Shown here: piece by piece, positions 217 through 53,267 of the stretch
Position numbering within the stretch: position 1 is the first letter of the stretch
Layout: each line of letters starts with the position of its first letter
The notes under the pieces: generated by a model
The model's database searches: none
Told to the model about the DNA's origin: nothing
Seen by the model: the letters and a program-made list of their open reading frames with translations, nothing else
Source: Octopus sinensis
Taxonomy: Eukaryota
Direction: 5' to 3'
Assembly: GCF_006345805.1 (NCBI RefSeq)
Contig: NW_021835423.1
Span: forward strand, 1 to 53,267
Length of the DNA stretch: 53,267 nucleotides
Translations under genes and position numbers: made by a program

Positions 217-3205
217 ATTCAGTAGTTTTATTTTTATAGCGTGCTTTCACTTCACTACCGAGCGCAGCTCTGTGTGCCTTGGGTATGTGCTGTGATTGTT
301 GTGATGCTCTGATGGTTATTGTATGGAAAGTGTTCTGCCTAGGATGTGTGCAGTGCCTAGTAGTGCAATTTTCTGTATGTTATATGTGTTTGTAAGTCCT
401 GGTGTTTTTGTTATGTATTTGTCTGAATATTTTTTTATCATGCCTAATGCACCTACTATGATAGGAATTGTTTCTGTTTTCAGGTTCCACATTCTAGTTA
501 CCTCTATTTCCAGGTCTTTGTATTTTGAGAGTTTCTCCATTTCTTTTAGAGACACGTTGTCATCTGCCGGTATTGATACATCAATTAGAAAGCACTTTTT
601 TTCTTCATGATCTCTGACAACTATATCTGGTCTGTTGGCCTTAATTTCTCTATCTGTGTGTATCGGCGTATCCCAGAGTATGGTTGCTTTCTCGTTTTCT
701 GTGACCTTTTCTGGTGTGTGCCTATACCATCTTTTTTCTGTTGTTATTCCATAATGTTGGCATAGCTTCCAATGTATGTAGGTTCCAACTCTGTCATGTC
801 TGTGAATATATTCCTTCTTAGCCAGGACTGGGCAGCTAGAGATAATATGATTATTGTTTCTTGTCCATCTCCACATTTCTGCTGCAGTTACTTGTAATAT
901 TTCTTTTCATTACATGTTTTTGGTAATTTCTGGTGGGGAGGCTTTGGTCTTGTGCTGCAATTAAAAATCCCTCTGTTTCTGCTTTGAGTCCTGAGCTTCT
1001 CAACCATTGCTGGGATTTTTCTTTGTCTATTTCTTTTGCGTTTAGTTTAGTGCAGTATTTACCATGAAGGGGCTTTTCTTGCCATCGTTTTATCATGGCT
1101 CGTTGCTGTTCTATTTTTAGTTTGGATTTCATTTGTTTTATAGCTTTTGTTGTTTTCTTCATCATCTTCTTCTTCTTCTTTGTGTTTATTAGGTGGTATG
1201 ATTTCTTGTTGTATTTGTCAGCTTCCTTAAATTCTGAGAACAGTTTTTTGTTTTGCTCGTGTTTTGCTGCTATCTGGATCAGTTTTCCTTCCTTCTGAAG
1301 TAGGTATTTTTGCAGTCCTATGGTGGTTATTTTATAGTAGTTTTCCAGCTGTATAAGGCTTTACCACCTTCTATACGTTGTATATATAGTCTTTCTATGT
1401 CAGATTTTGGGTGATGCATCCTAGATCCTGTCAGTATTTTTCTTGTTTTCCTATCTATTTTGGACAGTTCATTTCGTGTCCAGTTAAGGATATTGTAGCT
1501 GTAACTTATAACTGGGACAGCTAAAGTGTTGATACCTATTATCTTGTTTTTGGCATTGAGCTCTGTGTTTAGTATTGATCTAACTCGTCTATAATATTCT
1601 TTTTTTATTTTCTCTTTCATTTGTGTGTGTTGTGTCTTATCTAGTTCATGGATTCCTAAGTATTTGTAAGTTTGGCTTTGGTCTAATTCTTTTATTTCAT
1701 TGGTTTTATCTAGTGTGATGTTGTTACTCTTAACTAGTTTTCCTCTTTTCATGGTTACTTTGGCGCATTTTTCTAATCCAAATTTCATATCTATTTCTTG
1801 GTAAATCCATGAACTGTCTTTAATAGTGTTTCCAGCTGTTTGTCATTTGCAGCGTATAGTTTTAGGTCATCCATATATAAAGGTGGCTGATCGTTTTGCC
1901 GTAACATTTATATCCGCATCCAGTTCTATTTAGCATATCAGATAGAGGTGACAGTGCCAAGCAGAAAAGGAGTGGAGAGAGCGTGACTCCCTGGAATATT
2001 CCTCTTCTAATGGGGATGTCTTTGGTTTTCATGAGTCCCTCTTTTGTTTGGAGGTGTAGGACTGTTTGCCTTTTATTCATAGAGTGCTCTATGAATTTTA
2101 TGATTGTTGGTGCTACTTTGTTAATGGCTAGTGTTTCGAGGATCCATGTGTGGGGGCTGCTATCGAACGCCTTTTTGTAGTCAATCCAGGCCATACTGAG
2201 GCCTTTCTTCTTTCTGTGGCTGTCTTCAGTTACGGCTTTATTAATCATTAGTTGATCTTTACAGCCATATGAGCCCTTGCGGCATCCTTTCTGCTCTTCT
2301 GGGAACAGTTTGTTTTCGTCCAGGTGCTTGTTCAGCCTTTGCGATATCACTGCAGTAAATGCCTTGAACATAGTAGGGAGGCAGGTTATTGGTCTGTAGT
2401 TTTCTGGTTTTGTTGTTTCATTTCATTTGGGAATTAAGATGGTTTTCCCCTTCGTGAGCCATTCAGGCATTGTCTCTGGCTCTGCTAGTATGCTGTTAAA
2501 GTTTTCAGCCAGCTTTTTGTGCATTCCTGTTAGATATTTCAACCAGAAGTTGGGGATCTTGTCATGCCCAGGTGCCTTCCAGTTGCTTAGTTTTTGCAGT
2601 GCCTGGGTGACCTCTTCAGTTGTTATGGGGGTCCAAAGTTGTTCAGATGCCGAGTTTGTTATTTTCATACTCCTTTTTTTTGGCTGTTCGTTCGCGCCGA
2701 CCATATTTCTTCCAGAATTCTTCCAATTCTTCTGCCGTTGGTGCTGCAGTAACTTCTATTTTATTTTTGCCCAGTTCTTGGTAGAACTTTTTGGGGTCGG
2801 AGTTGACTTTTTGTTCTGTTCAAAGAAGCGTTGGCGTTTCTCGTACCGGCGGATCCTTTGAGCTTTGGCAAGGATATCTTGCTTCAGCTTTTTTTATCTC
2901 CGGCAAATTTTTCTGTGGTGTTATATTTGCGGAGTATTTTTGTTCTCTTTTTGTTGCTCAGTAGCGTTGCTTGTTTGCTGATTTCATTAAGAATCGACGG
3001 TCTTTTCTAATTTTTTTAATTTTGTTTTGGATGTTATTTATCCACAGGGTGTTTGGGTGGTGGTACTCCTGTTTGGGCGGGTTTGGGTGAGTATCCAGCT
3101 TCTTTTGTGGCTGCAGTGGCTGCTGCGATATCAAGTCATTTAGTTCAGTGATATCACTTTTTTTTGTTTCAGTGGCTAGTTCAGTGACGGCTAGGTTTAC
3201 GTTGT
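217..3205 (-). mobile_element. 5'-truncated, frameshifted non-LTR retrotransposon of the R4/Dong clade (RT, CCHC finger, restriction-like endonuclease)
   Basis: RT motifs (AWIDYKKAFD, GIFQGVTLSPLLF, FGLEKC), a frameshifted C..C..H..C finger near 830-900, and an RLE region HDRVGTYIHW...RPDIVV...IDVSIP...KLSKYKDL. TAA arrays flank both ends. Confidence 0.88.
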
Positions 3206-7554: not shown

Positions 7555-9430
7555 ATGTCGAGAAATTTTATTGTAGAACGCTGGTCGCGTTCCTTTATGG
7601 ACCAGCATTTTCCTAGTCTGGAAACGCTAGGAGAAAAAAAGAACTCATGCACGCAAAGTGCAAACCTGAATGACGTGGTAGTGAACGCTGCAACCACTTG
7701 CGGTAACAGCCCTGTCACCACCACCACCACCACCACTAACAACAACAACAACAACGAGACTACTACTACTACCACCACCACCTCCACCACAACCACCACT
7801 ACACCACGACCAACATAAATGATAAAAATGAAACTCACGCGAATACTATTAAGAAAAACAACAACAAGAACAACAATGAAAATGAAATAAATATCTTACT
7901 ATCTAATAGTGAAGATGTTAATATAAAAAATCAACAACACCAGTAAATTTCGCAGACACTCTGCGTCAGAAGAAGGAAATAGTAACATTTACAAATGAAG
8001 AGCTAATAGAAACGAGAGCTCTCTTTACAACCCGTGGGCAAGATTTAGTGCTGCATACACCTCAACACATAAAGGAACAAATAGAAAATAAGACAATTAT
8101 ATATAAAATTATAAGAAAAAACAAAAAACAAAATGAACAGATTACAAAAACGGATATAGAAAAGTGTTTAAAAAGCATAATTAAAAAAAAAGAATATATA
8201 AACTGGGGTCCCCAGTTTAACACAGTTGTGGTCCGCTTCCCTAACCAGGAAATGGCAAAACCTCACTCTACGGAGTCTTTGGAAAATGATGATATCAAAA
8301 TGGTACCTTATTTCAAAGGCCAGAGAGTGAGTAGAATTACTATTAAAAATGTACCCCCCGAGATCCCGAACAAATGGATAACAGGGGCAATCTGTTACCA
8401 TTTGAAAAAGATCAATATTTTAGAAACAGCCGTGTACCTAAACGACAATTGGGGTGGAAAAACAGTAGTAGTGACCATCCAGATTGAGGGGGCCTCTATC
8501 GAGAGCCTACCCGATAGGATCCACCTAGAAAATGGGCAAAGCCTATATATTGTGGCAGAAGGCAAGAAGCCTAGATGCTACAACTGTGGCAGCCCAGAGC
8601 ATTTAATTGCCAAGTGCACTCTGGCACAGAAAAAACAAGAAAGAACAAATCAGAAAACAAATAAAAAACCCTTGTTGCCAACACCAACACCAACACACTG
8701 AATTATGGAACAATGCCAAGAAGAAAAACAACAAACCAGCAAACAAACCCCAACAACATCACCAAGAAAAGAAACAGTACCAACAAAATCACCGTTGACG
8801 ACGCAACCAATTTATCATGCTGAACCAAAAGATAGACCAACACCAACACCGAGGACGACAATTAAAAAGACAGAAATCAGTGACGAGAAGACAAATTCTA
8901 CCCCTAACACCATAACAACACAAACACCGCACAAAACATCAACAATTTCTACAAGCATACATAGTAACACAAATGCTTTGCCTTTACCCTCTTCTGATAC
9001 GTCGGACGACGAAAGTTCGACGGAATGGCAAATAGCCACAGGGGGTAAAAGGAAAAAATCAAAAAAGCCCACCAAACAAGGAAGTACAGCAGGGAGATAT
9101 CTAACTCCGGACAGCATCCCCCTGGACAATCAAAAAATCAATGAACCCGCAAAACCATACACACAACTAACTGCAATAGACACAGACAATAAAAAATTAA
9201 TGGATTAGATTGCATCCAACACAGACATCTGTGAAGATGACTTTAAGACAAACAATCATCCGCGCACCACACCACCGAAGCACATAAAAATTGTACACAT
9301 AACACAAACACAACACCATACACTGAAAACAATATTTCCAAATGCGGTAGGCGGGTTTCAACGTTACCTCTCCAAAAAACTATACAAACACCTCATCAAA
9401 GACACTACAAAAGAAGAAGAAAAAAAATGA
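7555..9430 (+). pseudogene. Tx1 ORF1 (gag-like nucleic-acid-binding protein), disrupted
   Basis: CYNCGSPEHLIAKC (CX2CX4HX4C). Segments 8048-8701, 8705-9208 and 9209-9430 are in one frame separated by single stops. Inclusion of 7555-7818 is uncertain. Confidence 0.75.
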
Positions 9431-9519
9431 AACTTTCGAAATGAGTAAGTGACCTTCCCTCTTGCCTCTTGTCTCTTCCAATGTTTGTGTGTGAAACACA
9501 ATTTTCGTAAACGTCAATT

Positions 9520-11797
9520 ATGCTTAAATTAGGTTGTGTGAATGAGCGTGGCTTGGCGTCGGCTTGGAAGCAAGGTTACCTTCTAAACGACATCAAGTCA
9601 CTGAACGTGGAATTAGTAGCTATCAAGTCGCGGGCCCTCGCGTCCATGTTTGGCGATCAATTTGACATTTATTTTTCTCCCTGTCTGCCGAACATGGGTG
9701 GTGGAGGTACCGCGGTGCTTTTTCGAAAGAGTCTAAATGTAAAAGTAAGAGCAATATTCCTAGACCCGGAGGGTAGGCTGGTTGTCTTGGACGTGGATGG
9801 CAGAAATGGGTGTGCATTCCGTCTGATGGCAGTTTATGCACCGTCCTTAACGGGTCGGGCGGATTTCTTCAGACGTCTAGAGGTTTTCCTGGGTACGTCT
9901 AGACCTTTACTGTGAGTAGGGGATTGGAACGCTACCTTGGACACGCATCTAGATTATGTGGGAATGGATAGGAATAGAAGGGGGTGTAAGAGCCTCAAAG
10001 ACCTACTCAGACGTTTCCATTTGTCTGACAGGTTCCGACTCGACAATCCGAACGTACCAACGTGGACTTGGACAAACCGCGTCGGATCGTCGAGATCTTA
10101 TCTAGATAGAATTCTATGCAGGACAGCGGATAGGGATAGCGTAGGATGTCCACAATTTAAAATTGTCAGCTACACAGATCACAAATTTGTGACGTGTACG
10201 CTCGACTTAGATAAGACACATAGACAGGGTCCCGGTTACTGGAAACTGAACACGTCGCTCTTAGCGCGACAGGTTTACAGGAACCGGATTAGCGAGTTAA
10301 TTAAGAGGGCGCTGACGGGAGCCGTCGTTAACAATCGCTGGTGGTTCGCCCTGAAAATGGCAATGAAATCGGAATCAATTAGGTTTAGCAAGGAATTAGC
10401 GATAGATCGAAACAGAGTAGAGGGAGACCTGGTTAAGAAACTAGAAGAGGCACTTACCACTGGCAGCGCAACCAACGTGTTGGCTGCGAGGATGGCCCTC
10501 GACCAACACCTCAACGCCAAGCACGAAGGTTGCGTCGTCAGAGCTAAAATGCGTGCCTTAAGGAACGAAGGGATCGAGGTTGCGCGAGAGGCCCGGGTAG
10601 CGGAGGCGCAGCGTGGCAACAGAGCCACCATTCGGTCTCTAATAGATCAACAGGGATGCAGTTTACTCGAACCCGAAAGGATGTGAGGCCTTTCAGCAGC
10701 ACTTTGCTCGACTGTTTGGTGCGAGTGATGGGTCGGAACGCGGGATGGATTTCAGTGCCTACCTGACCGACCCGCCGCGGCTCTCGGCAAGAGAAGCGAA
10801 GTGTTGTGAAAGTCCCATCACAGCCGCTGACGTGCGGGATGCGATGGCGGGCTGCGCGAGGGATAAGTCGCTTGGATTGGATGGTATACCCTACGAGCTG
10901 TATAGTCAAATGCCAGACTTGTTTGACGACCTCTTGGCATCAGTCTGCTGCAACTGGCAACAAAACGGGAGAATTCCCGGTTTCGTGAGCCGAGGTGCAG
11001 TGACGTTGCTGAAGAAAGACCCAAACAAGGGGAATTTTATAGATAATTTCAGGCCCATCACTCTGCTCAACGCAGATTTGAAAATTTTGGTCAAAGTAAT
11101 AGCCGAGAGGTTGGCGCTTGTCATTGGTAAACTGGTCGACAGGGCGCAAACATGCGCCGTACCGGGCAGAACCATACATGACAACCTCCATCTGATGCGC
11201 TACATTTTGGACAGGGTAGTTAAGGATCCTGGCATAGGTGGGGCGCTGATAAATTTGGATCAGTCTAAAGCATTCGATAGGGTCGACCATCGGTACTTGG
11301 CGGCCGTCCTCAGGGCGGCTGGCTTCGGTCCCGTCTTCCGTGGTTGGATCGCTGCCTTGTATAGCGGCATCCGATCGGTGATTCGGGTGAACGGTCACCT
11401 GTCGAAACCGTTTGACATCACGTGTTCGGTCCGTCAGGGGTGTCCCCTGTAGGCGCTTCTGTATGTATTGACTCTCGAGCCGCTACTGCGAAAGCTGGCG
11501 ACACCGAGGGGCATCCCACGGGAACTGGGTTGCGGGACGAGCGTGTCGGCACATGCGGACGATGTCACCGTCATAGTGTCGAGCGACAAACACATCCGGA
11601 TGATAGGCGAGACATTAAGAAAATACGAAACGGTGAGGGGAGCGAAGATTAACCCGGAAAAGTCAGTGGGTTTGCTACTCGGCACCTGGAGAAGCAAACC
11701 CATGCCGTCCGACTGCGGCTCAGTAGTGGGACGCTGGACGGACGGACCGGTTAAATTGCTCGGGGTCTGGTTCAGTCCGGACCTCCAAATGGATAAG
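9520..11797 (+). pseudogene. Tx1 ORF2 (AP endonuclease and reverse transcriptase), disrupted
   Basis: LGCVNERGL, VGDWNA, YLDRI, TDHKFV, GPGYWKLN, NFRPITLLNAD, KAFDRVDH, VRQGCPL*, HADDVT. Stops at 9913 and 11450, and a frameshift near 10685. Confidence 0.9.
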
Positions 11798-12240
11798 AAC
11801 GACAAGTGTATGTGACTAACGAATGGAGATTGTTTAAAGACTCGAGTAAGGTTAGCCTCGAAGCTGTGTTGTTACATAATGGTAATGAAAAACCTTCCAT
11901 TCCTGTGGGTCATGCTATCGGTATGGAAGAAACTTATGAATCGATGGAACTCATTCTGAAAGGAGTTAATTACTCAGTTCATAAGTGAAATATTTCTGGT
12001 GATTTAAAGATGATTTACCTCATCCTAGGACTGCAGCTAGAATACATCAAAAATATGCACTTCTTGTGTGTTTGGAATAGTCGTGATGACAGCAACCATT
12101 ACACTGTAAAAGACTGCTCTAAAAGAGATCAGCGCATAATTGGTCGCTACAATGTGCAGTATGTGCCGCTGGTAAACCCAGAAAAAAATCTTCCTTCCAC
12201 CCCTTCACATCAAAATCGCCTTCATGAAAAACTTTTTTAG
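11798..12240 (+). mobile_element. DNA transposase fragment, probably Chapaev3 (CMC) type
   Basis: EWRLFKDSSKVSLEAVLLHNGN...SIPVGH...GDLK...LGLQ...FLCVWNSR matches a transposase family I recall as Chapaev3. The family name is unverified. Confidence 0.65.
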
Positions 12241-17099: not shown

Positions 17100-17299
17100 T
17101 CACTTTGCGTCTAATGACAGACATTCCATCGCAGCGTCACATTCAGCTTCTTCAAGAGCTGCACGTAATGTTGCGTGTGTCCGTGTTTCTGGGTCGCAAG
17201 TTTTGAACCATTCGTAAAGCATCAGGTAGCCTTGTTTTACAGCGTCAATAGACTCATCATCAATTTTCAGTTTAGTTGTATCAACTCCTAAAACTATCG
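17100..17299 (-). CDS. Terminal exon (200 nt), death domain C-half: (A)IVLGVDTTKLKIDDESIDAVKQGYLMLYEWFKTCDPETRTHATLRAALEEAECDAAMECLSLDAK*
   Basis: Acceptor gtcttttgcag|CG, stop TGA at 17102-17100. Helical death-fold pattern (MLYEW ... ATLRAALEE). Confidence 0.88.
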
Positions 17300-17599
17300 C
17301 TGCAAAAGACACAACAATAAGAAATAAATGCAACAACCTTAACAATATTAACAATAATATAAAAGATGTGTGTTGTTATAAACATAACAAAGAAACTATT
17401 TCAAGAGAGAAATATAAAAAAATAGCTAAGAAACAAGAAAAATATAAGACATTGTTTTCTATTTCTAGGGATGATGAGAAAAATAACAAAGTGGTTAAAT
17501 TAAAGGTGATTTTAAAAAAAACATTAATTGAAGTTTACACTTGAGAATCTTTTAAGGTAAACCGATGGCAGATGTGTTTGTGAAGGCAAAAGTGTATGA

Positions 17600-18340
17600 G
17601 AACCTAAAGAATCAACATAGGGTACCAACAGGCAAACCATTTGATCCATTCATTTCCTCTGCTCAATATTTCTGGGAGAGTTGTAGGGATAGAGACCCCT
17701 GGCATTTCTTCCATTGGGGCCTATCAGATGTAACCATCATTATATATTTTGGTTGGATTCCCAAGCATCAACAACTAAGTCTATGGATATCATCCAACTA
17801 TTTAGTGCTTGGTCTACCCCTGGGTCTCCTACTCCATTGGTTTGACTTTGAGAACCTGTCTTGTAATTCATTCCTGCGACATTCTGATCACATGTCCTAG
17901 GTACCAGAGATGTGAAGAAGTGGCTCAACCTGGAGAGACTCCCAGATCTCTGAACTATACATCCTATTGGGTAACATTACTCCAGAGACCCTTTAGAAGA
18001 ATCCCTTATATCTGTCTTAATCTGGCAGATTTCAGATCTGATACTCAAAGGGTCATGAAAGTAATGTCTCTCTGTGAAATCAATCACCTTGCAAAGTTCC
18101 CAAAATGACACTGAAAATCAAATGAATAATGATAGACCAACAGTCGATTATTCTCAGTCAAATTCAATCCTTTTTGAATCTACTCCAGATTCAATCAATT
18201 CTCCTGAACCCATTCAGTTATTCTTATTTCTCAGTGAGAGAGAGACCAGCCATGGTCTGGCTTCACTTGTGAATATTCATTTTCTGTCAAATTTCCTTAA
18301 AGCCATTCTCTCTTTTTGGATGTGGGGAATATGATATGAT
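17600..18340 (-). mobile_element. RTE-clade LINE 3' remnant
   Basis: GFF*RVSGVMLPNRMYSSEIWESLQVEPL and SRRPRGRPSTK*LDDIHRL. Confidence 0.7.
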
Positions 18341-18440
18341 TTGGCTGTGTCACCCCTATACTAAGTCTGTTTTTACTGAAGCATTTACAAACATATGTCA
18401 TGTGGTAAAGTCATTCCAATATGGCAATATAAAAGAGAGA

Positions 18441-18848
18441 ATACCAAACTAATTCCCTATGGATACCGTATTTATTACAACGAGTGGCTTGTAAACGTAT
18501 CTAACGAGCGAAAGTTAGATACGTTTACAAGCCACTCGTTGTAATAAATACGGTATCCATAGGGAATGAGTTTGGTATTTTATTTATTACACACGAATAA
18601 ACGACCATATTTTATTAACCCAATAACTAAATTTTTCACGTTTAGTTGTTACTTATGAATGACAAAAGTAGTGCCGTCACCGGGACCTCGGGTCATCACC
18701 ATGAATTGACCAATCAGAAGCAGCGCTGTCACCGTTACCTCGGGTCATCACCATGGATTGACCAATCAGAAGCAGCGCTCGCAGTATCTGACATATGTTA
18801 GATACCAAAAATATCTCAAAGTGTTCTCAATCACATGTGTGTAATAAT
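18441..18848. mobile_element. Non-coding element with a 65-bp-arm palindrome, a 52-bp tandem duplication and 11-bp inverted ends
   Basis: Arms 18441-18505 and 18514-18578 with one mismatch. Tandem units 18676-18727 and 18728-18779. ttattacacac/gtgtgtaataa inverted pair. Confidence 0.7.
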
Positions 18849-19205
18849 TGCAATTATCACTTTCAAACACAATAACCCAATCCCTAATGGCTTCAAGAAG
18901 ACCCTAACTCATGGTCTTTTGATGGAGTAAAGACGAACCAAAAACGTTGTCATTAACTCAGCTGTTTACCCTTAACATATTTTTCTTCTTTCTTCCAATA
19001 TTAAATGCTACTTGTATTTTCTTGTGTATCCACAATTACCAACCTCAGTGGATACTTTATGAAATACCAGTAATATCATTAATAGAATTTATTTTGCAGC
19101 TAACCATTCCACTGGAAATTAGGAATGTAACCTGTTCTCTTTCATCCTGACAAGGTGAATGTAAAATTTATAGAAATCAATTAGGTAGTGTAATTTTATA
19201 CTCAC

Positions 19206-19277
19206 CTACTTGCCACCAATCTCTTCCTAACCTCTTAGCCACTCTCAGAAGATCCTTCTCCTTCAGCTCTGGACTCC
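19206..19277 (-). CDS. Exon (72 nt, phase 1-1), death domain N-half: (G)SPELKEKDLLRVAKRLGRDWWQV
   Basis: Acceptor ttatttcag|GG and donor GTAG|gtgagt. The LGRDWWQVA motif joins directly to IVLGV in the terminal exon. Confidence 0.9.
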
Positions 19278-19514
19278 CTGAAATAAATATTTCCAAATTT
19301 TATAATTTATACTAAATTTCTTAATCTTTATTCTTGAGCCATGCTTATCATCAATGGTCAACTGGTGACCACTATGATTTTGGTCAACCTTTTTTAATCT
19401 ATGTAATAGCTCAATATTTTGGTCCACAACAAAATAGATTATACTTCTTAAACTTCGTCTCTCTATCAAGACATCCTACATAATCTAACAATGTTGTATT
19501 TATCACATTTAATT

Positions 19515-20694
19515 AGTTAGTTAGTTAATTGGTTCAAATCAATAGCAAGTCATGTAGGGGACATGGAGTTAAGTACAGGTGTGTTCATGTAAAGGTTCGG
19601 CCATTGAGGTCAAGAGAGGCTTTGAACAAAGCGGTCGTCGTCATCTTCACCATCTCGTCTGGCAGCTGTTCAAGGATCCGCAACCCGGACGGAGAAGCTC
19701 CTCTCGATTGAGATGAATCGTCGCAGGTAGAGCTTTTCGGAATGGCAGCCGACACTACTGGAGCAGTGTGAAGAATTTCGAGAGTTTTCGTTATGTGTGT
19801 CGAGAAGAATACCAGGTCGTCTAGGGGGACATGGAGTTAAGTACAGGTGGTGTTCATGTAAGAGCAGGCCACTGAGCTCAAGGGAGGCAAAGCGGTCGTC
19901 GGCATCTTCACCATCTCGTCTGGCAGCTTGTTCCACGGATCCGCAACCCGGACGGAGAAAGCCCCTCTCCTTCGATTGAGATGAAATCGTCATAGATAGA
20001 GCTTTTCGAATGACCCCGCAGCCACACTCTGGAGCAGGAGTGAAGAACAGCTCTTTCGAGAGGTTACACTTTCCGCTTATGATGTTGTGGGCGAGAATGA
20101 GATCACCACGGCGGCGGCGTTTTTCAAGAGAATAAAGGTCGAGCGTCCTCAGCCTTTCTTCGTAGGACAAATTTTTGAGACCATGAACCATGCGGGTAGC
20201 CAGCTTCTGGACTCTTTCGAGATGCTGTATGTCTTTGAGGAGATAGGGAGAAGAGGCTTGAATCCCGTACTCCAATATGGGTCTCACCAGCGTGACATAG
20301 AGTGGTAGGAATATGGCTGCTGTGAGCATTCCGAATGACCGTCGAATCAAGAACAGAATTCCGCGTGCTTTGTTGGCAGCATGGACGCACTGGGCCGAAG
20401 GCGAAAAGGAGGAATCCACCAAGATACCCAGGTCCTTTACCTGATCGGTCCTTTCCAGCAGCAGATGATGACCCGTCCGAAATCAAGTTGAGTTGCAGGA
20501 GGAGAGCCAACAGGCAGATGACAGCACTTTGACACGTTCAGACACAGGTCCCATTCGTTAGACCACTTCCAAATTTGGTGGAGGCATCGACGAAGATCCT
20601 CTATATCACCGCGAGGAGCGACCAGTTTGATATCGTCGGCAAATAGAAGGGTGTGTTGCGTGAGGTCGTCGGGCAAGTCATTTATGAAGACCAG
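19515..20694 (-). mobile_element. 5'-truncated CR1-group LINE with a duplicated 3' end, inserted in module copy 1
   Basis: LFADDIKL, LYVTLVRPILEYG, LERVQKLATRMV, LSYEERL, RRRGDLI. Junctions are defined by the uninterrupted module copy 2. Confidence 0.88.
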
Positions 20695-21049
20695 TTGATA
20701 AGACTATTTTTCTCACAGTTCTCTATTTCCCTTCTTATATCTGTACCAAACCTGTGACATGACTTCACTCACCAACATTTTTCTCATCTTCTGCTTAATT
20801 CTAATGTCAACCAAGGTGGTTTCCAAAGACCTAACCACAAATACACGGCAGACAAATTCATGTAGGATAAACATACACCTGACATCTTTGTGAAGGGTTG
20901 ATGTTGGTAATCTTGAATCGTAACTCCGCACATCCCAGTTCACAAGAACATCATCTGATTCAGGAAATATTTTAAGACTCCTTAATAACGAAGTTCTTTA
21001 AAACCCTTTATTCCCCAAAGGTTTGGCTTATCTATTGCTCATAAGATGT

Positions 21050-23751: not shown

Positions 23752-25139
23752 GATATTTCAAGGTTTTACATTTAATCGTATTTCTTTATTATAAATAAAC
23801 TATATTCTTTTATTGTTAGACATTTCTATCACCATGGTCAACTGGTGACACTCTGGGTTTGGTCAAGATTTTTATACTCTCTACAGTGACCCCATGTAAT
23901 AACTCAGTATTTACGTCCACAACGAAATTGACTGACCGTCCTAAATCTCCACTATCTATTAAGACATCATACATAATCTAACAATGTTACCTTTATTTCA
24001 TTTAATTATCACTTGATAAAACTGTTTCCCCTTAGTTCTGTCTTTCTTTTCTTCTATCCGTGTCCAATCTATGACATATCATTGTTGTCTCACTTCTAGA
24101 TTTCACTAACCAACATTCGTCTCATCTTCTGCTTAATTGTAAAGTCAGGGAAGTTGGTCATCAAAGATCTAACCACAGACACAACAGACAACTTCAAGTA
24201 GGATAAACATACAACTCCTCTCTTTGTTAAACGTTGCTGCTGGTAATCATTAATTTTAACTATCTGCATCACAGTTTAACAGGATGTCAAGTGAAATATT
24301 TGAAAACTCCCTAAAAAATGAATTTTTTTAATGGTGAGCAATGAATAGTTTTACACAGGTGGAACGGAAAGTGATATCAGGTGTTCTAAAAGACATCACC
24401 TCATTAACAACTTATAAGAAACTGTTCATCCATATATTATTACAGTGAAAATAACTGAAATGATATACCTGAACAGGTTTTCAAGAAAATAGGGTATCTC
24501 TGTTGACCCTATTTTATACAGCAGTCAAAGTTTACCCACTCATTTGATGTTTCCTCTATGACTGTGGTGGACGTCCATGGTTTGAAAACCCAGTCACAAG
24601 TAAATTTGAGAACACAAAAGTTACACCATTAAATGACAGAGACTGTCTTTCAGATGCCAATATAAGAAGAACATTACGAGGAACATGTAACTCTACTTAC
24701 ATCCCACACCATCAACACTACTATGCCATTTGTCCCTTATGCTAATTAAGATTAACTAATTAAAAAAGGTCATTATCATGCTTTATGAAATAGATTTAAT
24801 TAGTGTCGCATATATAAAAAATATATGTTTCACAACATACTGTTTGTGATACGGATGAAAGCAGAACAATAACATCTGAACTTTACTGGACGTTGGATGT
24901 CAATAATCCCAAATTGTAGGGATATGGTCCAATACCCAAGAAAACAATAGAAATCCATAGAGGGCGCACAATGTAAAATCTTAGATGAGGGCAGAAGATG
25001 ATGCTATGACAAAATAAGGTTACATTTCAGAGATAAAAGCATTGAGTACTGGTGTGGACGTAATCACCTTACCCACTGCCCCAAACTGGCCGGCATTAAG
25101 CTAACGTTTCAAATCAGTTTTCTTATACATATTAAAGCG

Positions 25140-26379: not shown

Positions 26380-26810
26380 CTGAAAAATACATTTCAAAGT
26401 GGTTTTAGTAAAATTTCTTTATCCTTTCTAATAATCGATATTTTATTATTGTGAGACATTCGTGTCATCACTGATGACAACATGCTTTTGGAGAACATTT
26501 GTATGCTTTCTACAGTGGGGCCAAGAAATGGTTCACTATTTGAGTCCACAACAGAATAGACCACACTTAACAACCCTTCTCTGTCTCTTAAGTCATCCAA
26601 CAATTCTAACAATTCTGAAATTATCTCATTTAATTATCCCCTAATAACCGATTTTCTCTTAGCTTCGTTTGGGTTTTCTTATGTTTGTGCCAGATCTATG
26701 ACAAGACATCTCTAATCAACATTCGTCTCATCTTCTGCTTAATTCCAGTGTCAACCAAGTTGAGCATCGAAGTCCTAGCCTCAAACACGACACACCACTT
26801 CCAGACGGAT

Positions 26811-27420
26811 ATATATCTATATCTATACTTGTTTTGCAAGATTTTTGATGTGAAATGGTGTGTTGAAACAGATATTGTTGTATTTAGGAATGGTCATTTT
26901 GCCAGTTAGCCAATAAAAACACACGCACTATATATTTAGTGTTACTTTGCTTCAGCGTTATTTATTTTTTTACTTAATCTTATTTTCGGCCAGAGTTCTT
27001 TCGTCACACTCCTGTGACCTCATCAGTGGTCCTTTGCTTTCTTCTTTCTTATTTGTTGTCTCTCTCCTTACTAACCATCAGCCGTTTTGTATTTTGTATT
27101 CCTATTGTACGTGTCCTCATTTGTGCATGCGTATACCTCTATGTGTGTCTATGTTTAGTTAGTGTGTGTGGGGGTTGAAGTGCCTGTAATATTTGTATCT
27201 CCTGTTTATATACGTACGTGTAATTTGTTTTTGTTTTTGGCCGAAATAAGATTAAGATTAATGTAAAAAAATAAATAAGACTGAATCAAAGTAACACCAA
27301 ATATGTAGTGCGTGTGTTTTTATTGGCTAAACTGGCAAAATGACCATTCCCAAATACAATATATCTATCTATCTATCTATCTATCTATTTATTTATCTCT
27401 CTCTCTCTATATATATATAT
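26811..27420. mobile_element. Penelope-like non-coding remnant with inverted arms of about 115 bp, inserted in module copy 3
   Basis: Arms 26878-26992 and 27238-27360. Carries a minimal hammerhead motif. Absent from copies 1 and 2. Confidence 0.65.
26988..27032 (-). ncRNA. Minimal type I hammerhead ribozyme motif (Penelope type)
   Basis: ggacca-CTGATGA-g-GTCACA ggag TGTGAC-GAAA-gaac-TC-tggcc: complete core, 6-bp stem II and a short stem I. Confidence 0.65.
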
Positions 27421-28239
27421 ATACCTGCTCTCTTTGTTATTGGTTACTACTAGTAATCTTTAATCTTAATTACCCACATCACAGTTCTCCAGAATGTAAT
27501 CAGATTTGGGGAGATATCTGAAGATATTTCAATGTCATTCATCCTCCTGAATAAAGCAGGTCGAACAGAAAGTGACATCAGGTCTAACAGGAAGTGATAT
27601 CTCGTGTCCTAAATTAACACACTACATTCACACAAAACCTCATTAACGACATAAAACTTGTCGTCCACACATTATTGCTGTGAAAATATTTGAAACGGTT
27701 CAGAAGAACTGATACTCGGGAATACTAATCTATACATCAATCAAAGTTTCCCCACCCTTTTGATGTCCCCTCTCAAATGTTGGCACCTAAACCTTCAGTT
27801 GAGATTTTCTTATTGAGTCTCTTATTTTATAAAAGCTCACTTTGATATTCATATAAATGCAGTTGTTTTTAATTATCAGCTTCCGAAGATATTGATAAAT
27901 CATTAATAACTCTAATCACACACAAGATGTCGGTATTTACTGATAGAACCTTGGTGATTTATTGGTATTTAGTCACCATTTATAATTCAGTATTCTTTAT
28001 TATTTATATTGTGGCAGAAAGTAACCATCTTGAAGTGTGACAAGTCTTCTAATTGGACAAGAACAATGTTTAGTGGGAGTAGTGAGAGACATAATATGAC
28101 AGAGAAAAGACACCTGGAACATCTTTTATCAAAAGTGTGCTTGATTAAGTCAGAACTGGATCTACACAACAACATGAAATACAATATTCCACACCATAAA
28201 CCCCATGAGACAAACAGACAGATCATACAGTATTCTTAC

Positions 28240-28382
28240 CCAAATTATTTTTGCTCGTTATATTCTGTCCACACATATGGCATCGTTTAGGTATCTTTTG
28301 GGGACAGCATTTCTTACACAGCGAAAGATGTTTACATGGAAAGAACGTCTCTGTGGCCACTTCGTCTTCACAAAACATACAT
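28240..28382 (-). CDS. Exon (143 nt), RING-HC finger: CMFCEDEVATETFFPCKHLSLCKKCCPQKIPKRCHMCGQNITSKNNL
   Basis: Acceptor ttgttcctcag|A and donor TTGG|gtaaga. Spacing C-x2-C-x11-C-x-H-x3-C-x2-C-x8-C-x2-C, the C3HC4 type seen in Mind bomb and IAP RINGs. Confidence 0.92.
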
Positions 28383-28930: not shown

Positions 28931-30574
<1,644 letters not shown>

Positions 30575-30577
30575 TAT

Positions 30578-30659
<82 letters not shown>

Positions 30660-34765: not shown

Positions 34766-35218
34766 ATAAAAGAAATGTGACAGAGAGCTGTTTCAGGCAG
34801 AATTCTTCATGGAATGGACAAGATGTATTTATTATCATGGCACCAGCACTATAAATGTTACTGTCTATCATATGAACCTCTCTTCTACCCAGTATCATTG
34901 TTAATTCAGAATAATATCTCCTGTCTTGAATAGATCATTTCTCCTTCAAATTTTGATGACCGTGTTTGTATGGCCAACATTCGAGATGGATCACCTTCTC
35001 TACCATGGAGAGGTCGTGCCTTTGAGGACGGAAGGGGACGGAATAGAGAATAGTGTTTGTTACATAATAATATAACTAAGGGTTACCATTGTGACTGGAT
35101 CAGGAAATGGTAATGGAGGATGGGGTTGGTAGGTGAGAATTGCGATACAAACAATGTCTGTTTCTGTCTGTCTTTCTCTGTCTGTTTGTCTATTTTACAC
35201 CCACACAGACGCACAAAT

Positions 35219-35306
<88 letters not shown>

Positions 35307-35322
35307 CACACACACACACACA
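35219..35322. repeat. (CA)n microsatellite
   Basis: Direct reading. Confidence 0.95.
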
Positions 35323-35350
35323 CATAGTCACAAACAATGTGAAAACTTAC

Positions 35351-35563
35351 CTGATCTAACATGGTCATGTGCTCCACCTCAGAATGAAAGTTGTTTTCTG
35401 TTTCTAACGCCAGATGCAGGCAATTATTTCCTCCATGTTCGACAACATTTACATTCGTGCCCCTGGCTATCAGCCGCTGCATTATTCCGAGGTGACCGTC
35501 CGAAACAGCTTCAAGCAATGGTGTCCTATATTCTTTGTTCACAATTTCTAAATTCACCGAATC
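35351..35563 (-). CDS. Exon (213 nt), ankyrin repeats: DSVNLEIVNKEYRTPLLEAVSDGHLGIMQRLIARGTNVNVVEHGGNNCLHLALETENNFHSEVEHMTMLDQ
   Basis: Acceptor ctccacaaag|GAT and donor CAG|gtaagt. Ankyrin motifs TPLLEAV and CLHLAL. Confidence 0.92.
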
Positions 35564-35991
35564 CTTTGTGGAGGTAAAAATGGAAAATGAAAATTTACAT
35601 GAAAATCAGGGTTGATATCAATGTCATTACAGTTTTCTACGGGTACTAGATCAAACTGATCAAATACATTTGATGTTTGCCAGTGAAATAAATATTCCAT
35701 AAGGACCTTCTATAACCTGATACATGTGTGTGTTAGAGACATGATAAACATATTAAGATGTCCTACGTTTGCCCCTCTATAGTAAGTTGTAGGGCAACAG
35801 AACTAGAGTAAACACATGATTAGCAGATCAAGTCAAGTAAAGAAGAATTATGATTTCTAATGTTTACTTTTGACGTTGCTACATTAATAAGGGGTTCATA
35901 AAACTGCTGAGCCGGTTAGCGTCCACATGCATAAAACTAATGCGCACGCACGCACACACACATAAACATCAGTGTTACATATATAAATACA

Positions 35992-36452: not shown

Positions 36453-36624
36453 AACTGAACGAACACTGCAGAATACATGAAGTAGATCCAGTGTCACTTA
36501 TAGCTCAACTGTGGATGACATGAGGTAACCGAATCAGCGAAAGATCTTTAAGCGTCATACTTCTAAATGTATACACAAATTCCAAATATTTACAAATACA
36601 CACGCACACACACACACACATACA

Positions 36625-38515
36625 GGGAAGATGATGCTTTGGACGGGAAGAATTACAGAGGTATCAAACTATTAGATGAAGCAATGAAAATTACAGAGAG
36701 GGTCACAGACAAAATAATTAGGATGTGTGTTAGACCAGAAGAGATGCAATTTGGTTTTGTGCCACAGCGAAGCACCTCTGATGCTATATTCCTGATAAGG
36801 CGGCTGCAGGAGAAGTACAAAGCCAAAGATAAACTCTTGTACTGGGCCTTTGTTAAACACGGAGAAAGGCTTTGACAGGATCCCTCGATCCCTTATTTGC
36901 TGGTCACTGCAAAAGCTAGGGATGGACGAATGGTTGGTGAGAGCGTTACAAGTCATGTACAGGGATGCTGTCAGTAAGGTGAGGTTTGGCATCGTGTGTA
37001 GCAATCAATTAGGGTACAAGTAGGGGTTCACCATGGATTAGTCCTCAGCTCCTTCCTGTTTATCAGAGTCCTCCAGGCAATAACTGAGGAATTTAAGATG
37101 AACTGCTTCTAGGAGATCCCCAATGCTGATGACCTTGTTATCATAGCCGAATAACTTTCAGAACTAGGTAAATTTTAGGTATATCAGTAAGGGCTAGAAT
37201 CAAAGGACCCTAAACTTAGTCTAACAAAAACCAGTTTTAGTAAGTAGGAAAGCGGACAATTCACAAATCCCCTTAGGAAGATGGCACTGTTCGATCTGTA
37301 GAAAAAGCGTAGGTAGGAAGTTCATAAGATGTGCCCAGTGTAAGGTATGGACACATAAGTGTTACAGCAATATCAGAGGAAGGTTAACAGGGATAATAGT
37401 TTTTCTGTGTGGAAGGTGCACAGGTACAATAAACAGCACAAATGTAGAGAAAATAGAGCCATCAATTGCCAGGTAGGTAAGCTACTGGTAGTTGATAGTT
37501 TCCGCTATCTCGGTGGCCAAGTCAGGAGTGTGGTTGGTTGTTCCTTGAGTATAGCTGCAAGAATAAGAATAAGATGTGCAAAGTTCAGAGTAATCTTAAC
37601 TCTAATGGTAACAAAGAGCGTCTCCCTGAGATTGAAAGGCAGACGTTATGATGCCTGTGTGTAAACAACTATGTTACATGTCAATGAAACATGGGCTGTG
37701 ACTTCTGAGGACTTCCATAGGCTTGAAAGAAATGAAGCCAGTATGTCTCGCTGGGTGTACAATGTCAGTGTGCATGTACGATAGAGTATGGAGGCCTTGA
37801 GAGAAAAGCTGGGCATTGGAGACATCAAATGGAGTGTGCAATGAGACGTCTGCGTTGGTATGGTCGTGCGATGTGTATGGACATGGACAGCTGTGTCAAA
37901 AAGTGCCGATCTCTAACTGTGGAAGGATCCTTTGGAAGACGGAGACCCAAGAAGACTTTCGATGAGTTGATGAAGAATGATCTCCAACCGTTGGACATCA
38001 TAGAGGAGATGACAAGTGACCGAGAGCCCTGGTGATATTCTCTGCGGGAGAGGACATGTCAGGCCAAGTGACGATAAGGATGTGGTCGTGCCAGTGTCCT
38101 ATAAGTGGCAGCCGTGCATCATAGCCGTGGCTGTTCGCTTCCGGTGCCATGTCAATGACACCTGGGTATCGTAGTTGTGGTCACCGATGGTGCCATGTAA
38201 ATTGGCACCTGGGAATTATCGTCGTTGGTGGTGCCATTTAAATGGCAACCATCCGTGAATCGTAGTCGTGGCCATTGTCGGTGTCATGCAAGTGGCACCC
38301 GTGCCGGTGGCATCTGAAAGCACCAGTTACACACCTGGGGTGGTTAGCATTAGGAAGGACATCGAGCTGTAGAAACCATGCCAAATCAGACAGGAACGTG
38401 GGGCAGCTCACCGACTCATAATCTCCTGTCAAACCAGCCGACACATGCCAGTATGGTGGGGATGTTGTTAATGATGATAATGATGGTGATGATGATGATG
38501 ATGATGATGATGGTG
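36625..38515 (+). mobile_element. Degenerate RTE-clade LINE (RT to 3' end) with a (GAT)n tail
   Basis: NYRGIKLL, MQFGFVP, STSDAIF, ADDLVII, RRLRWYG and RRRPKKTFDE. Confidence 0.85.
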
Positions 38516-52200: not shown

Positions 52201-53267
52201 CTCCTCGCTGTTTTCTCCTTCTCTTTCCCTCTCTCTTGTTTCTTCCCTCTCTCAGTCTTTCATTTCTCTCTCTTTTCCTCTTCCCTCTTTCCTTTCTCGC
52301 TCACTCGCCTTTTTTCCTCTCCTCTCGTTTTCCTTTTATTCTTCTTCCTCTCTCTCACTCTTTCATTTGTCTCTTTTTTCTCTCGTTTCTTTTTCTTTCT
52401 CTTCTCTTTCCTTTCTCGCTCACTCGCTTTTTTCTCTCTGTATCTCTCGTTCTTTTTCTCCCTCTTCTTTTCTCGCTCTCGCCTCTCTCTCTCGCTTTCT
52501 TTCTCCTTCTTTCTCCCTCTCGTTTTCTTTTTGTCCTTCTTCCTCTCTCTCACTCTTTCTCATTTTCTCTATTTCTTTCTTCTTTCATTCTTTCTTTTCT
52601 CTCTCTCTCCTCTTTTTCTTTTACTCGCTCTCATCACATTTTCTCCTCTCTCAGTCTCGTTTCTTTATCTCCTTCTTCCTCTCTCTCACCCTTTCATTTC
52701 TCTCTTTCTTCCTCTCATTTCTTTCTATCTCTCTTTCTTTTCTCGCTCTCTTTCTTTCTCTATCTTTCTTTTCTTTCTTTTCTCTCCTCTTGTTTTTCTT
52801 CTTATCATTCTTCCTCTCTCTCACTCTTTCATTTCTCTCTTTTTTTCTCTAGTTTCTTTCTCTCTCTCTCCTTCTTGTCTCGCTCTCTCCCTTTTTTCTC
52901 CTTCTCTCTCCCTCACGTTTTCTCTATAACCTTCCTCCTCTCTTTCACTCTTTCATTTCTCTCTTTCTTCCTCTCGTTTCTGTTTCTCTCTCTTTCTTTT
53001 CTCGCTCTCGCTTTTTTCCTTCTTTCTCCCTCTCGTTTTCTTTTTATCCTTCTTCCTCTCTCTCACTCTTTCATTTCTCTCTTTCTTCCTCTCGTTACTT
53101 TTTCTCTCTCTTTCTTTTCTCGCTCTCGCTTTTTTTCCTTCTTTCTCGCTCTCGTTTCCTTTTTATCCTTCCTTCTTTCCTTCTCTCTCTCACTCTTTCA
53201 TTTCTCTCTTCTTATCTTCCTCACGTTTCTGTTTCTCCTCTCTCTTTTCTTTTCTTCTCGCTCTCGC
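49270..53267. repeat. At least 4 kb of polypyrimidine (CT-rich) degenerate satellite
   Basis: Almost purine-free on the + strand, with recurring units of about 185 bp and later about 120 bp. Confidence 0.95.

What the first reader, a model, noticed from the sequence alone, without database searches (positions are those of the whole stretch)
26988..27032. Hammerhead ribozyme motif in the sense strand of the host intron
Seen: a full catalytic core (CUGAUGA, GAAA, UC), a perfect 6-bp stem II, a short stem I and a vestigial stem III, on the same strand as the gene's pre-mRNA, just upstream of the duplicated linker exons. Established: Penelope-like elements carry minimal type I hammerheads that usually cleave as dimers through a palindromic stem III. 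Caveats: AGAACU is not palindromic and there is one extra G after A9. Inference: if active, it could cut the pre-mRNA after the RING exon and uncouple it from the death domain.
Basis: partly seen in the sequence, partly recalled or inferred. Interest (0 to 1): 0.75.

Follow-up and report, generated by a model that had tools for sequence, protein, structure and literature searches.

The report
Decayed retrotransposon hammerhead motif in intron
The hammerhead ribozyme motif is really there, but it is most likely the leftover ribozyme of a truncated Penelope-like retrotransposon that landed in an intron, and it is probably unable to cut the host gene's RNA.

Summary
The motif exists as described, on the window's minus strand (27032->26988), which is the sense strand of an ankyrin-RING-death-domain gene. 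All core bases are intact. Helix II is a perfect 6 bp and helix I is 3 bp (5 with a bulged A). Helix III is one pair closing a GAAC loop. Shuffles give 0.007-0.04 such motifs per window, so it is unlikely here but not rare genome-wide. The "extra G" after A9 is not a defect: the literature calls it a conserved trait of Penelope-like-element (PLE) minimal hammerheads, and all 10 distinct reference motifs from six of nine PLE loci I fetched have it. The motif lies in a 539-bp insertion (26828-27366) missing from a paralogous segment. The insertion has PLE hallmarks: two inverted 5'-truncated copies, a 42-nt tail at one end, and a microsatellite target. Against membership: Rfam and two covariance models built from real PLE hammerheads do not recognise it, no PLE ORF is present, and no family copies were retrievable. 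Activity is unlikely: there is no partner motif, helix III is non-palindromic (+0.7 vs about -6 kcal/mol), and helix I is sequestered in a 113-bp hairpin. One oddity: the short inverted copy starts exactly at the predicted cleavage site. Verdict: an ordinary relic of a known kind.

The parts
26988..27032 (-). Minimal type I hammerhead motif. Helix I 5' strand 27032-27027; core CUGAUGA 27026-27020; unpaired G 27019; helix II 27018-27013 with 27008-27003; loop GGAG 27012-27009; GAAA 27002-26999; helix III inner GAAC 26998-26995; U16.1 26994; C17 26993; predicted cut 26993/26992; helix I 3' strand UGGCC 26992-26988.
   Evidence: Sequence read, descriptor scan, fold, position table. Model R2 aligns every element in register but scores it only 5.4 bits.
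26828..27237 (-). Long 5'-truncated copy of the inserted element. It has 205 nt upstream of the hammerhead (27237-27033), the hammerhead itself, a 123-nt post-cut segment (26992-26870) shared with the short copy, and a 42-nt AC-rich extension ('tail', 26869-26828) found at this end only.
   Evidence: Arm alignment, self-BLAST, empty paralogous site.
27238..27366 (+). Short inverted copy holding only the post-cut segment. Its similarity to the long copy begins at T-GGCCGAAA, which is exactly the base after the predicted cleavage site.
   Evidence: Inverted repeats I1 and I2, BLAST 91.3% identity over 115 nt, alignment.
26807..26827 (.). Left flanking TA/TATC-type microsatellite, taken as the target site.
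   Evidence: The same motif lies on the same strand on both sides of the insert.
27367..27422 (.). Right flanking microsatellite: (TATC)n, (TC)n, (TA)n.
23780..24287 (.). Paralogous copy of the surrounding intron and exon segment that lacks the insert. The empty site is near 24204.
   Evidence: 26413-26811 aligns with 23780-24205 and 27413-27497 aligns with 24203-24287.
28240..28382 (-). RING-finger exon of the host gene, upstream of the motif in the transcript.
   Evidence: Pfam zf-C3HC4_3, E 4.3e-8. AG acceptor and GT donor read.
17100..19277 (-). Two death-domain exons (about 19206-19277 and 17100-17299) with their intron, downstream of the motif in the transcript.
   Evidence: The phase-compatible GT-AG splice gives a product that matches Pfam Death at E 2.4e-4 and 21.6 bits, just under the 22.6-bit cut-off.

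Best explanation
The motif is the ribozyme module of a Penelope-like retrotransposon (PLE), or of a non-autonomous element moved by one. It is preserved in a dead, 5'-truncated insertion.

Shown: a 539-bp insert (26828-27366) lies in a TA/TATC microsatellite within the intron after the RING exon. It consists of two head-to-head inverted copies of the same 3'-terminal sequence. The long copy carries the hammerhead 123 nt from the shared 3' end, plus a 42-nt tail. The short copy carries only the post-cut segment.

Inferred: both DNA strands at the target were extended by reverse transcription of element RNA, as shown in vitro for Poseidon_Ac. That would give the inverted pair in a single event.

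In the parent element, tandem copies would let two minimal hammerheads pair through a palindromic helix III and cleave the multimeric transcript. This role is proposed in the literature but not proven.

This copy has no partner, has a non-palindromic helix III, and is embedded in a long hairpin. It most likely does nothing to the host pre-mRNA beyond adding a 113-bp double-stranded stem to the intron.
For: 1. Architecture. It matches the published PLE min-hammerhead description on four counts: one unpaired base after A9, G10.1-C11.1, a long helix II (6 bp), and a short open helix I (PMC4209133). It also matches 10 distinct hammerheads that I extracted from six of nine fetched PLE loci. Those loci come from Anolis, Uloborus, Henosepilachna, Petromyzon, Ischnura and Mugilogobius. 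All 10 have exactly one unpaired base and a helix II of 6-7 bp.

2. It is an insertion. The paralogous segment 23780-24287 lacks it.

3. PLE insertion hallmarks from the literature (PMC8557442) are present:
   - an adjacent inverted 5'-truncated copy;
   - a tail at one end only, 42 nt here against 30-40 bp in the literature;
   - a microsatellite target.

4. The same topology occurs in real PLE loci. L004, L006 and L008 have short inverted 3'-terminal copies or head-to-head pairs, and L010 has inverted arrays.

5. The hammerhead lies near the 3' end: 123 nt here, against 68-81 nt in L003 and L006 and 85-92 nt in PMC11167929.

6. The chance expectation for the motif alone is 0.007-0.04 per window. 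On top of that, its cut site coincides with the arm boundary.

7. Inactivity is supported and by the reported lack of cleavage by single min-hammerheads.

8. The arms differ by about 9%. An intact 31-nt core plus stems is expected in roughly a quarter of copies of that age by chance, so the intact core is no evidence of selection (my calculation).
Against: - No reverse transcriptase or GIY-YIG ORF of a PLE is in the window. Pfam finds only LINE-type RVT_1 and Tc1-type HTH domains.
- No other copy of the insert could be retrieved from any collection. Family-level conservation and covariation are therefore untested.
- Two covariance models built from bona fide PLE hammerheads score the motif at only 4.4 and 5.4 bits, below window noise of up to 13.5 bits. 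Model R2 does recover an independent fish PLE family at 21-22 bits.
- Helix III (AGAACU) is non-palindromic, unlike all 10 reference motifs.
- Rfam finds nothing, although its hammerhead models also miss the validated Poseidon_Ac ribozyme.
Confidence: 0.68

Rival explanations
1. Chance motif. An unrelated inverted-repeat element (a MITE or foldback element, or two independent retroposon insertions) happens to contain a sequence that fits the relaxed hammerhead descriptor.
For: - Descriptor matches are expected at 0.007-0.04 per 53-kb window, which means hundreds per large genome.
- Rfam and both PLE-trained models fail to recognise the motif.
- Helix III is non-palindromic, as a random match usually would be.
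- No PLE ORF is present and no family copies were found.
Against: - A chance motif would not be expected to combine exactly one unpaired base after A9, G10.1-C11.1 and C17 with a cut site that falls on the inner boundary of the inverted arm.
- The insert is asymmetric, with a 42-nt extension at one end only that is absent from the empty paralog. That does not fit a cut-and-paste MITE.
- The two arms abut directly, which argues for one event rather than two insertions.
Confidence: 0.15
2. A non-autonomous hammerhead-bearing retroelement (retrozyme-like or SINE-like) that transposes as a unit with this inverted-arm structure, rather than a truncated autonomous PLE.
For: - The insert has no coding capacity.
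- Animal retrozymes have been proposed to be non-autonomous derivatives of PLE pLTRs (bioRxiv 10.64898/2026.07.22.740005).
- The insert's 539 bp is not far above the 170-400 nt of metazoan retrozymes (PMC7229834).
Against: - Metazoan retrozymes are tandem repeats, each carrying a canonical hammerhead. Here there is a single motif and no tandem repeat.
- The two arms have different lengths and one carries a tail, as expected from independent truncation of two cDNAs.
Confidence: 0.12
3. An active intronic ribozyme that cleaves the host pre-mRNA after the RING exon and lowers or reshapes output of the death-domain isoform.
For: - The motif is on the sense strand of the intron and its catalytic core is intact.
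- Without the upstream arm, helix I forms with probability about 0.49, so there could be a brief co-transcriptional window.
- Intronic hammerheads do exist in amniote genes (cited in PMC7229834).
Against: - There is no dimer partner in 53 kb.
- The helix III self-duplex is +0.7 kcal/mol.
- The upstream arm is transcribed first and sequesters helix I in the finished transcript: P 5e-5, and the ribozyme-competent fold costs +3.7 kcal/mol.
- Single min-hammerheads are inactive in vitro, and dimers only weakly active.
- The intact core is explained by the insert's age alone.
- A 5' cleavage fragment without a poly(A) tail would not yield a stable RING-only mRNA (my own knowledge of mRNA turnover; not tested here).
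Confidence: 0.04

Closest known systems
Minimal hammerheads of metazoan Penelope-like elements (Cervera & de la Pena 2014, PMC4209133)
   Same: Type I topology. Intact core. One unpaired base between A9 and 10.1. G10.1-C11.1. Long helix II (6 bp) and short helix I. Helix III reduced to A15.1-U16.1 plus a few bases. Occurs as a single motif in a truncated element, with an inverted partner copy within a few hundred bp.
   Different: The helix III inner bases (GAAC) are not palindromic. No PLE ORF is linked to it. No family consensus is available.
Poseidon_Ac hammerhead of Anolis carolinensis (PMC11167929), with the related motifs I extracted from spider, beetle, lamprey, damselfly and goby PLE loci
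   Same: Same layout, confirmed by the in-register alignment to model R2. It lies a similar distance upstream of the insertion's 3' end. The elements form inverted and tandem arrangements.
   Different: Those motifs share a conserved CGAAACGUC block (helix III ACGU) and mostly a 7-nt loop II. This one has GAAAGAACUC and a 4-nt loop, and it scores only 4.4-5.4 bits against models built from them.
Drosophila virilis Penelope-type hammerhead variants with a 2-nt insertion in helix III (PMC4209133)
   Same: Six-base helix III segment (A-N-NN-N-U). 6-bp helix II with an unpaired base at its 5' end. Very short helix I.
   Different: In those variants the inserted dinucleotide is palindromic. Here it is AA, one substitution away from the palindromes AGUACU or AGAUCU. 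I know these variants from the paper's text only and made no sequence comparison.
Intronic hammerheads HH9 and HH10 of amniote genes (Rfam RF02275, RF02277)
   Same: Sense-strand location in an intron of a protein-coding gene.
   Different: Those are ultraconserved canonical ribozymes with their own Rfam families. Neither family matches here.
Metazoan non-LTR retrozymes, newt satellite 2 and Schistosoma Sm-alpha hammerheads (PMC7229834)
   Same: Type I hammerhead carried by a non-coding, AT-rich repeat. Weak helix III, so activity depends on dimers.
   Different: Those are tandem arrays with canonical loop-loop contacts. This is a single motif in an inverted-repeat insertion.

Membership tests
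Hammerhead ribozyme (general) | Conserved core: C3 U4 G5 A6 N7 G8 A9, G12 A13 A14, A15.1-U16.1, H17 | tested here: met
   All positions are present, with C17 at the cleavage site.
Hammerhead ribozyme (general) | Three helices around the core | tested here: inconclusive
   Helix II has 6 perfect pairs and helix I has 3 (5 with a bulge). Helix III is a single pair closing a 4-nt loop, so a monomer lacks a stable helix III.
Hammerhead ribozyme (general) | Match to a curated Rfam hammerhead covariance model | tested here: not met
   No hit at gathering score, nor at E<=10 in 1.1 kb or in 81 nt. Control: the validated Poseidon_Ac hammerhead is also missed, so the test has little power for minimal variants.
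Hammerhead ribozyme (general) | Self-cleavage that is abolished by core mutations | not testable with these tools
   Needs transcription and cleavage assays.
PLE minimal hammerhead | One unpaired nucleotide between A9 and 10.1, with a G10.1-C11.1 pair | tested here: met
   G at 27019, and G27018-C27003. All 10 distinct reference motifs have the same feature.
PLE minimal hammerhead | Long helix II (6-8 bp) and short open helix I (type I) | tested here: met
   Helix II is 6 bp and helix I is 3-5 bp. Reference motifs have 6-7 bp and 2-6 bp.
PLE minimal hammerhead | Palindromic 15.2/16.2 and loop 3, allowing a dimeric helix III | tested here: not met
   G15.2 and C16.2 are complementary, but the inner AA is not. 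The self-duplex is +0.7 kcal/mol, against -6.2 and -6.4 for the nearest palindromes. All 10 reference motifs are palindromic (ACGU, ACGCGU, ACACGUGU).
PLE minimal hammerhead | Lies in the pseudo-LTR of an element that encodes a PLE reverse transcriptase and GIY-YIG endonuclease | tested here: not met
   No such ORF is in the window. This is expected for a 5'-truncated copy, so it does not exclude PLE origin.
PLE minimal hammerhead | PLE-type insertion anatomy: an adjacent inverted 5'-truncated copy, a 30-40 bp tail at one end, a microsatellite target, and the hammerhead within about 100 nt of the 3' end | tested here: met
   for the window. Searches show the same features in real PLE loci. Definitions come from PMC8557442 and PMC11167929.
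PLE minimal hammerhead | Profile similarity to known PLE hammerheads | tested here: not met
   Models R1 (7 sequences) and R2 (19 sequences) give 4.4 and 5.4 bits, below window noise. R2 finds an untrained fish PLE family at 20.8-22.2 bits. Both models represent the Poseidon/ACGU type only.
PLE minimal hammerhead | A genome-wide consensus family with compensatory changes | not testable with these tools
   No related copy turned up in the viral, metagenome or prokaryote collections, in the protein collection, or in papers. The source genome is not available.
Metazoan non-LTR retrozyme | Tandem repeats of 170-400 bp, each with a hammerhead | tested here: not met
   There is a single motif, and no direct repeat of the unit.
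Conserved intronic hammerheads (HH9/HH10) | Match to RF02275 or RF02277, with orthologous conservation | tested here: not met
   No Rfam match. Orthologous conservation could not be tested.

The most novel reading that the evidence does not exclude
The short inverted copy (27238-27366) begins exactly at the base after the predicted cleavage site of the hammerhead in the long copy. It may therefore be a run-off cDNA made on a transcript that the family's minimal hammerhead had already cut in vivo.

If so, it would be a genomic fossil of in vivo self-cleavage by a PLE min-hammerhead before reverse transcription. The one study that looked for such cleavage in RNA-seq data found no reads starting or ending at the cut site (PMC11167929).
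Probability: 0.25. Interest if true: 0.5.

Novelty: new member of a known kind. Interest (0 to 1): 0.2.

Why it matters
As it stands, this is one more decayed copy among the thousands of minimal hammerheads that Penelope-like elements have scattered through animal genomes, so it matters little for the host gene. Two points have some wider use.

First, curated Rfam models miss minimal hammerheads, and profiles trained on one PLE clade miss this motif. Negative Infernal results should therefore not be read as absence of such motifs.

Second, the 5' end of the inverted partner copy coincides with the predicted cleavage site. If a genome-wide survey of this family showed the same pattern repeatedly, it would be indirect in vivo evidence that these weak ribozymes do process PLE transcripts. 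That question is still open.

Tried and rejected
1. Rfam, three ways (whole window at gathering score; 1.1 kb and 81 nt at E<=10). No hammerhead hit; only weak snoRNA noise. The control on the validated Poseidon_Ac ribozyme also failed, so the negative is uninformative.

2. Searches for family copies:
   - Exact hammerhead 29-mer in viral contigs: none.
   - Arm 23-mer in metagenome, prokaryote-genome and viral contigs: none.
   - Degenerate hammerhead pattern in metagenome contigs: none.
   - Arm 19-mer in prokaryote genomes: one hit in a Pseudomonas contig. About four such hits are expected by chance for a 19-mer in 596 Gb, so I rejected it.
   - Antisense 71-aa ORF across the motif as a protein query, hoping for spurious ORF calls on sister copies: none.
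   - Sequence strings in the paper library: none.

3. Organism identification through a LINE ORF. This gave only 57-71% relatives in an unnamed, fragmented assembly. The organism remains undetermined.

4. Covariance models from real PLE hammerheads (R1, R2). They work on other PLE families but not on this motif. MAFFT could not align the variants with longer helix III correctly, so a broader model could not be built.

5. A second candidate core at 46664 (-). It has a 4-bp helix II including G-U pairs and a long loop. I rejected it as chance.

6. MITE reading. Rejected because of the one-sided 42-nt extension and the lack of a recognisable target-site duplication.

7. ORF starting at the AUG inside CUGAUGA, as in Poseidon_Ac. 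Here it stops after 17 codons (read).

Full report
**What is there.**
Read on the minus strand, 27032->26988 is GGACCA CUGAUGA G GUCACA GGAG UGUGAC GAAA GAAC U C|UGGCC.
- Every universally conserved hammerhead base is present: C3-A9, G12-A14, A15.1-U16.1 and C17.
- Helix II is six perfect Watson-Crick pairs, starting with G10.1-C11.1 and capped by GGAG.
- Helix I is CCA/UGG, which extends to five pairs with a bulged A.
- Helix III is only the A15.1-U16.1 pair around GAAC.
- One G lies unpaired between A9 and helix II.
- No other motif of this kind occurs on either strand of the window, even with relaxed cores.

**Is it more than chance?**
I ran a structural descriptor on 300 dinucleotide-preserving shuffles of the window. 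It found 0.04 loci per shuffle with helix II >=4 bp and 0.007 with helix II >=6 bp. The motif is therefore unexpected in one window. In a gigabase genome, though, hundreds of such matches would arise by chance, so the motif alone cannot settle the matter.

**Curated models.**
No Rfam hammerhead family matches, either at gathering score or at E<=10 in 1.1 kb or 81 nt. As a control I ran the same 81-nt search on the Poseidon_Ac hammerhead of Anolis (L003 4988-5036). Its core-dependent cleavage was shown experimentally (PMC11167929). Rfam misses it too. The Rfam negative therefore has little weight for minimal hammerheads.

**Context: the motif sits in a discrete insertion.**
- Arms 26870-26982 and 27253-27366 are inverted repeats, 91% identical.
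- The surrounding DNA (26413-26811 and 27413-27497) aligns colinearly with a paralogous segment (23780-24205 and 24203-24287) that has nothing in between. So about 26828-27366 was inserted after that duplication.
- When both arms are aligned in the same sense, the insert resolves into two head-to-head copies of one sequence.
- The long copy is on the minus strand (27237->26828). It has 205 nt, then the hammerhead, then a 123-nt post-cut segment, then a 42-nt AC-rich extension.
- The short copy is on the plus strand (27238->27366). It holds only the post-cut segment.
- Both outer ends abut TA/TATC microsatellite of the same strand sense (26807-26827 and 27367-~27422). This indicates insertion into a microsatellite.

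**Comparison with what is published.**
Cervera & de la Pena (PMC4209133) describe metazoan PLE min-hammerheads as follows:
- type I topology, with a long helix II and a short helix I;
- a conserved unpaired base between positions 9 and 10.1, and a conserved G10.1-C11.1;
- a minimal, palindromic helix III that requires dimerisation;
- single motifs uncleaved in vitro, and dimers only weakly active;
- most genomic copies are single motifs in truncated elements, sometimes with a second motif 100-700 bp away on the other strand.

Craig et al. (PMC8557442) list the insertion hallmarks: strong 5' truncation, an adjacent inverted 5'-truncated copy giving inverted repeats, a 30-40 bp tail at one end, and a bias for microsatellite targets.

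The Poseidon_Ac study (PMC11167929) shows that the protein nicks and extends both DNA strands. Reverse transcription starts internally, 85-92 nt past the hammerhead cut site, by my subtraction of the paper's figures (start sites at 111-118 bp into the ORF and a cut site at 26 bp).

The insert here fits each of these points.

**Comparison with real PLE loci.**
I took the Poseidon_Ac ORF from that paper's supplement and found 5054 relatives. I then fetched nine PLE loci from lizard, spider, beetles, lamprey, damselfly, moths and goby.
- My descriptor found 10 distinct hammerheads in six of the loci.
- All 10 have exactly one unpaired base after A9, a helix II of 6-7 bp, a helix I of 2-6 bp, and a palindromic helix III (ACGU, ACGCGU or ACACGUGU).
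- The cut site lies 68-81 nt from the end of the last tandem unit in L003 and L006.
- Short inverted 3'-terminal copies next to the main copy, or head-to-head pairs, occur in L004, L006 and L008. L010 has inverted arrays.

The topology seen in the window is therefore the PLE topology in actual data, not only in the literature.

**Where membership fails.**
- Model R1, built from seven of these hammerheads, scores the window's motif at 4.4 bits. That is below unrelated window hits of 7-13.5 bits.
- R1 does find untrained PLE hammerheads in L009, L005 and L006 at 24-31 bits.
- Model R2, built from 19 sequences, recovers the untrained goby family at 20.8-22.2 bits. It gives this motif 5.4 bits, although it aligns every element in register with a 3-nt deletion in loop II and a 2-nt insertion in helix III.
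- So the motif shares the architecture of the Poseidon/ACGU-type hammerheads but not their sequence profile.
- Its helix III is non-palindromic.
- There is no PLE ORF in the window.
- No sister copy could be retrieved from any collection.

**Can it cut the host pre-mRNA?**
The host gene is on the minus strand.
- The Ank exon is at 35198-35605.
- The RING exon is at about 28240-28382 (Pfam E 4.3e-8).
- The death-domain exons are at about 19206-19277 and 17100-17299. Their phase-compatible GT-AG splice gives a Pfam Death match at E 2.4e-4, just under the curated cut-off.

The motif is therefore intronic and in the sense orientation, as claimed. Activity is nevertheless unlikely:
- There is no partner hammerhead in 53 kb.
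- The helix III self-duplex is +0.7 kcal/mol, against -6.2 and -6.4 for the two one-substitution palindromes.
- The transcript of the whole insert folds into a 113-bp hairpin (-188 kcal/mol, z = -15.7). This hairpin pairs U1.1-C1.5 of helix I with the other arm.
- In that fold helix I has probability 5e-5, and the ribozyme-competent fold costs +3.7 kcal/mol.
- Without the upstream arm, helix I forms about half the time. But that arm is transcribed first.
- The arms differ by about 9%. At roughly 4-5% change per copy, an intact set of about 31 constrained bases is expected in about a quarter of copies. The intact core is therefore not evidence of selection.

**An oddity.**
Similarity between the two copies begins at T-GGCCGAAA, exactly the base after the predicted cut. 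With random 5' truncation over about 400 nt, this has under 1% probability. Two explanations are possible:
- a run-off cDNA made on a self-cleaved RNA;
- the reverse transcriptase stopping at the folded ribozyme.

In the real loci the inverted copies end 17 nt upstream of the cut (L004), 24 nt downstream of it (L006), or well upstream of it (L008). The coincidence is therefore not general, and with n=1 it remains a lead.

**Verdict.**
- The PLE attribution is the best-supported reading (about 0.68), with a chance motif in an unrelated repeat as the main rival (about 0.15).
- The proposed regulatory cleavage of the host transcript is not supported (about 0.04).
- This is a new member of a known kind and of low interest, apart from the cut-site coincidence.

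Noticed in passing
window 26870-26992 and 27238-27366 (minus-strand transcript): The inverted arms give the intron a 113-bp, about 91% paired RNA hairpin. The MFE of the insert transcript is -188 kcal/mol, z = -15.7 against shuffles. It could be a substrate for dsRNA-binding enzymes such as editing or dicing activities.
   Followed up: partly
window 27238 / 26992: The short inverted copy's similarity to the long copy starts exactly at the base after the predicted hammerhead cleavage site. Real PLE loci examined (L004, L006, L008) do not show the same coincidence.
   Followed up: partly
L009 2939-2986, 7211-7258, 9932-9979, 10374-10421 (Dendrolimus PLE locus): Four PLE hammerheads carry the core GUGAUCA, a natural swap of the C3-G8 pair to G3-C8. 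This is the same double change that the Poseidon_Ac study reports as partly restoring activity. My CUGANGA descriptor missed them and model R1 found them (30-31 bits).
   Followed up: no
L010 1218, 4114 (-) and 7272, 10178 (+) (Mugilogobius PLE locus); L005 3801-3848 and 6928-6975 (Tenebrio): The goby PLE hammerheads use the U3-A8 core variant (UUGAAAA) and sit in divergent inverted arrays. The Tenebrio copies have a U4C core (CCGAAGA) on both sides of the ORF.
   Followed up: no
window 26413-26811, 23780-24205, 20732-20859 (also 19266-19475): The segment holding the putative 'linker' exon and its downstream intron is present in three diverged copies (67-78% identity). Short minus-strand ORF pieces recur, such as IKQKMR(R/K)ML. 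I did not establish whether these are real exons.
   Followed up: partly
window 29026-30620: 255-bp inverted repeats (29026-29278 and 30375-30620, 91%) flank minus-strand ORF fragments with a Sleeping Beauty/Tc1-type HTH domain (Pfam E 1.5e-7). This is a decayed Tc1/mariner-like transposon.
   Followed up: partly
window 316-2704 (-), 8048-11815 (+), 19670-20703 (-), 36567-37664 (+): Several non-LTR (LINE-type) retrotransposon fragments are present. Pfam finds RVT_1 domains and one zinc-knuckle ORF, and relatives of one ORF carry an Exo_endo_phos endonuclease domain. None is PLE-type.
   Followed up: partly
window 41000-48900 and 49200-53000: Very long low-complexity tracts. GAT/ATC-type trinucleotide repeats give hundreds of codons of poly-D/M/I in all frames, followed by about 3.5 kb of CT-rich repeat. 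These generate most of the long mechanical ORFs in the window.
   Followed up: no
window 26464-26495 (+): This is the best window hit of both PLE-hammerhead models (13.4-13.5 bits, E about 0.2-0.4). It contains CUGAUGA but has no helix II or GAAA, and it aligns only through a local-end gap. It is a false positive that outscores the real motif.
   Followed up: yes
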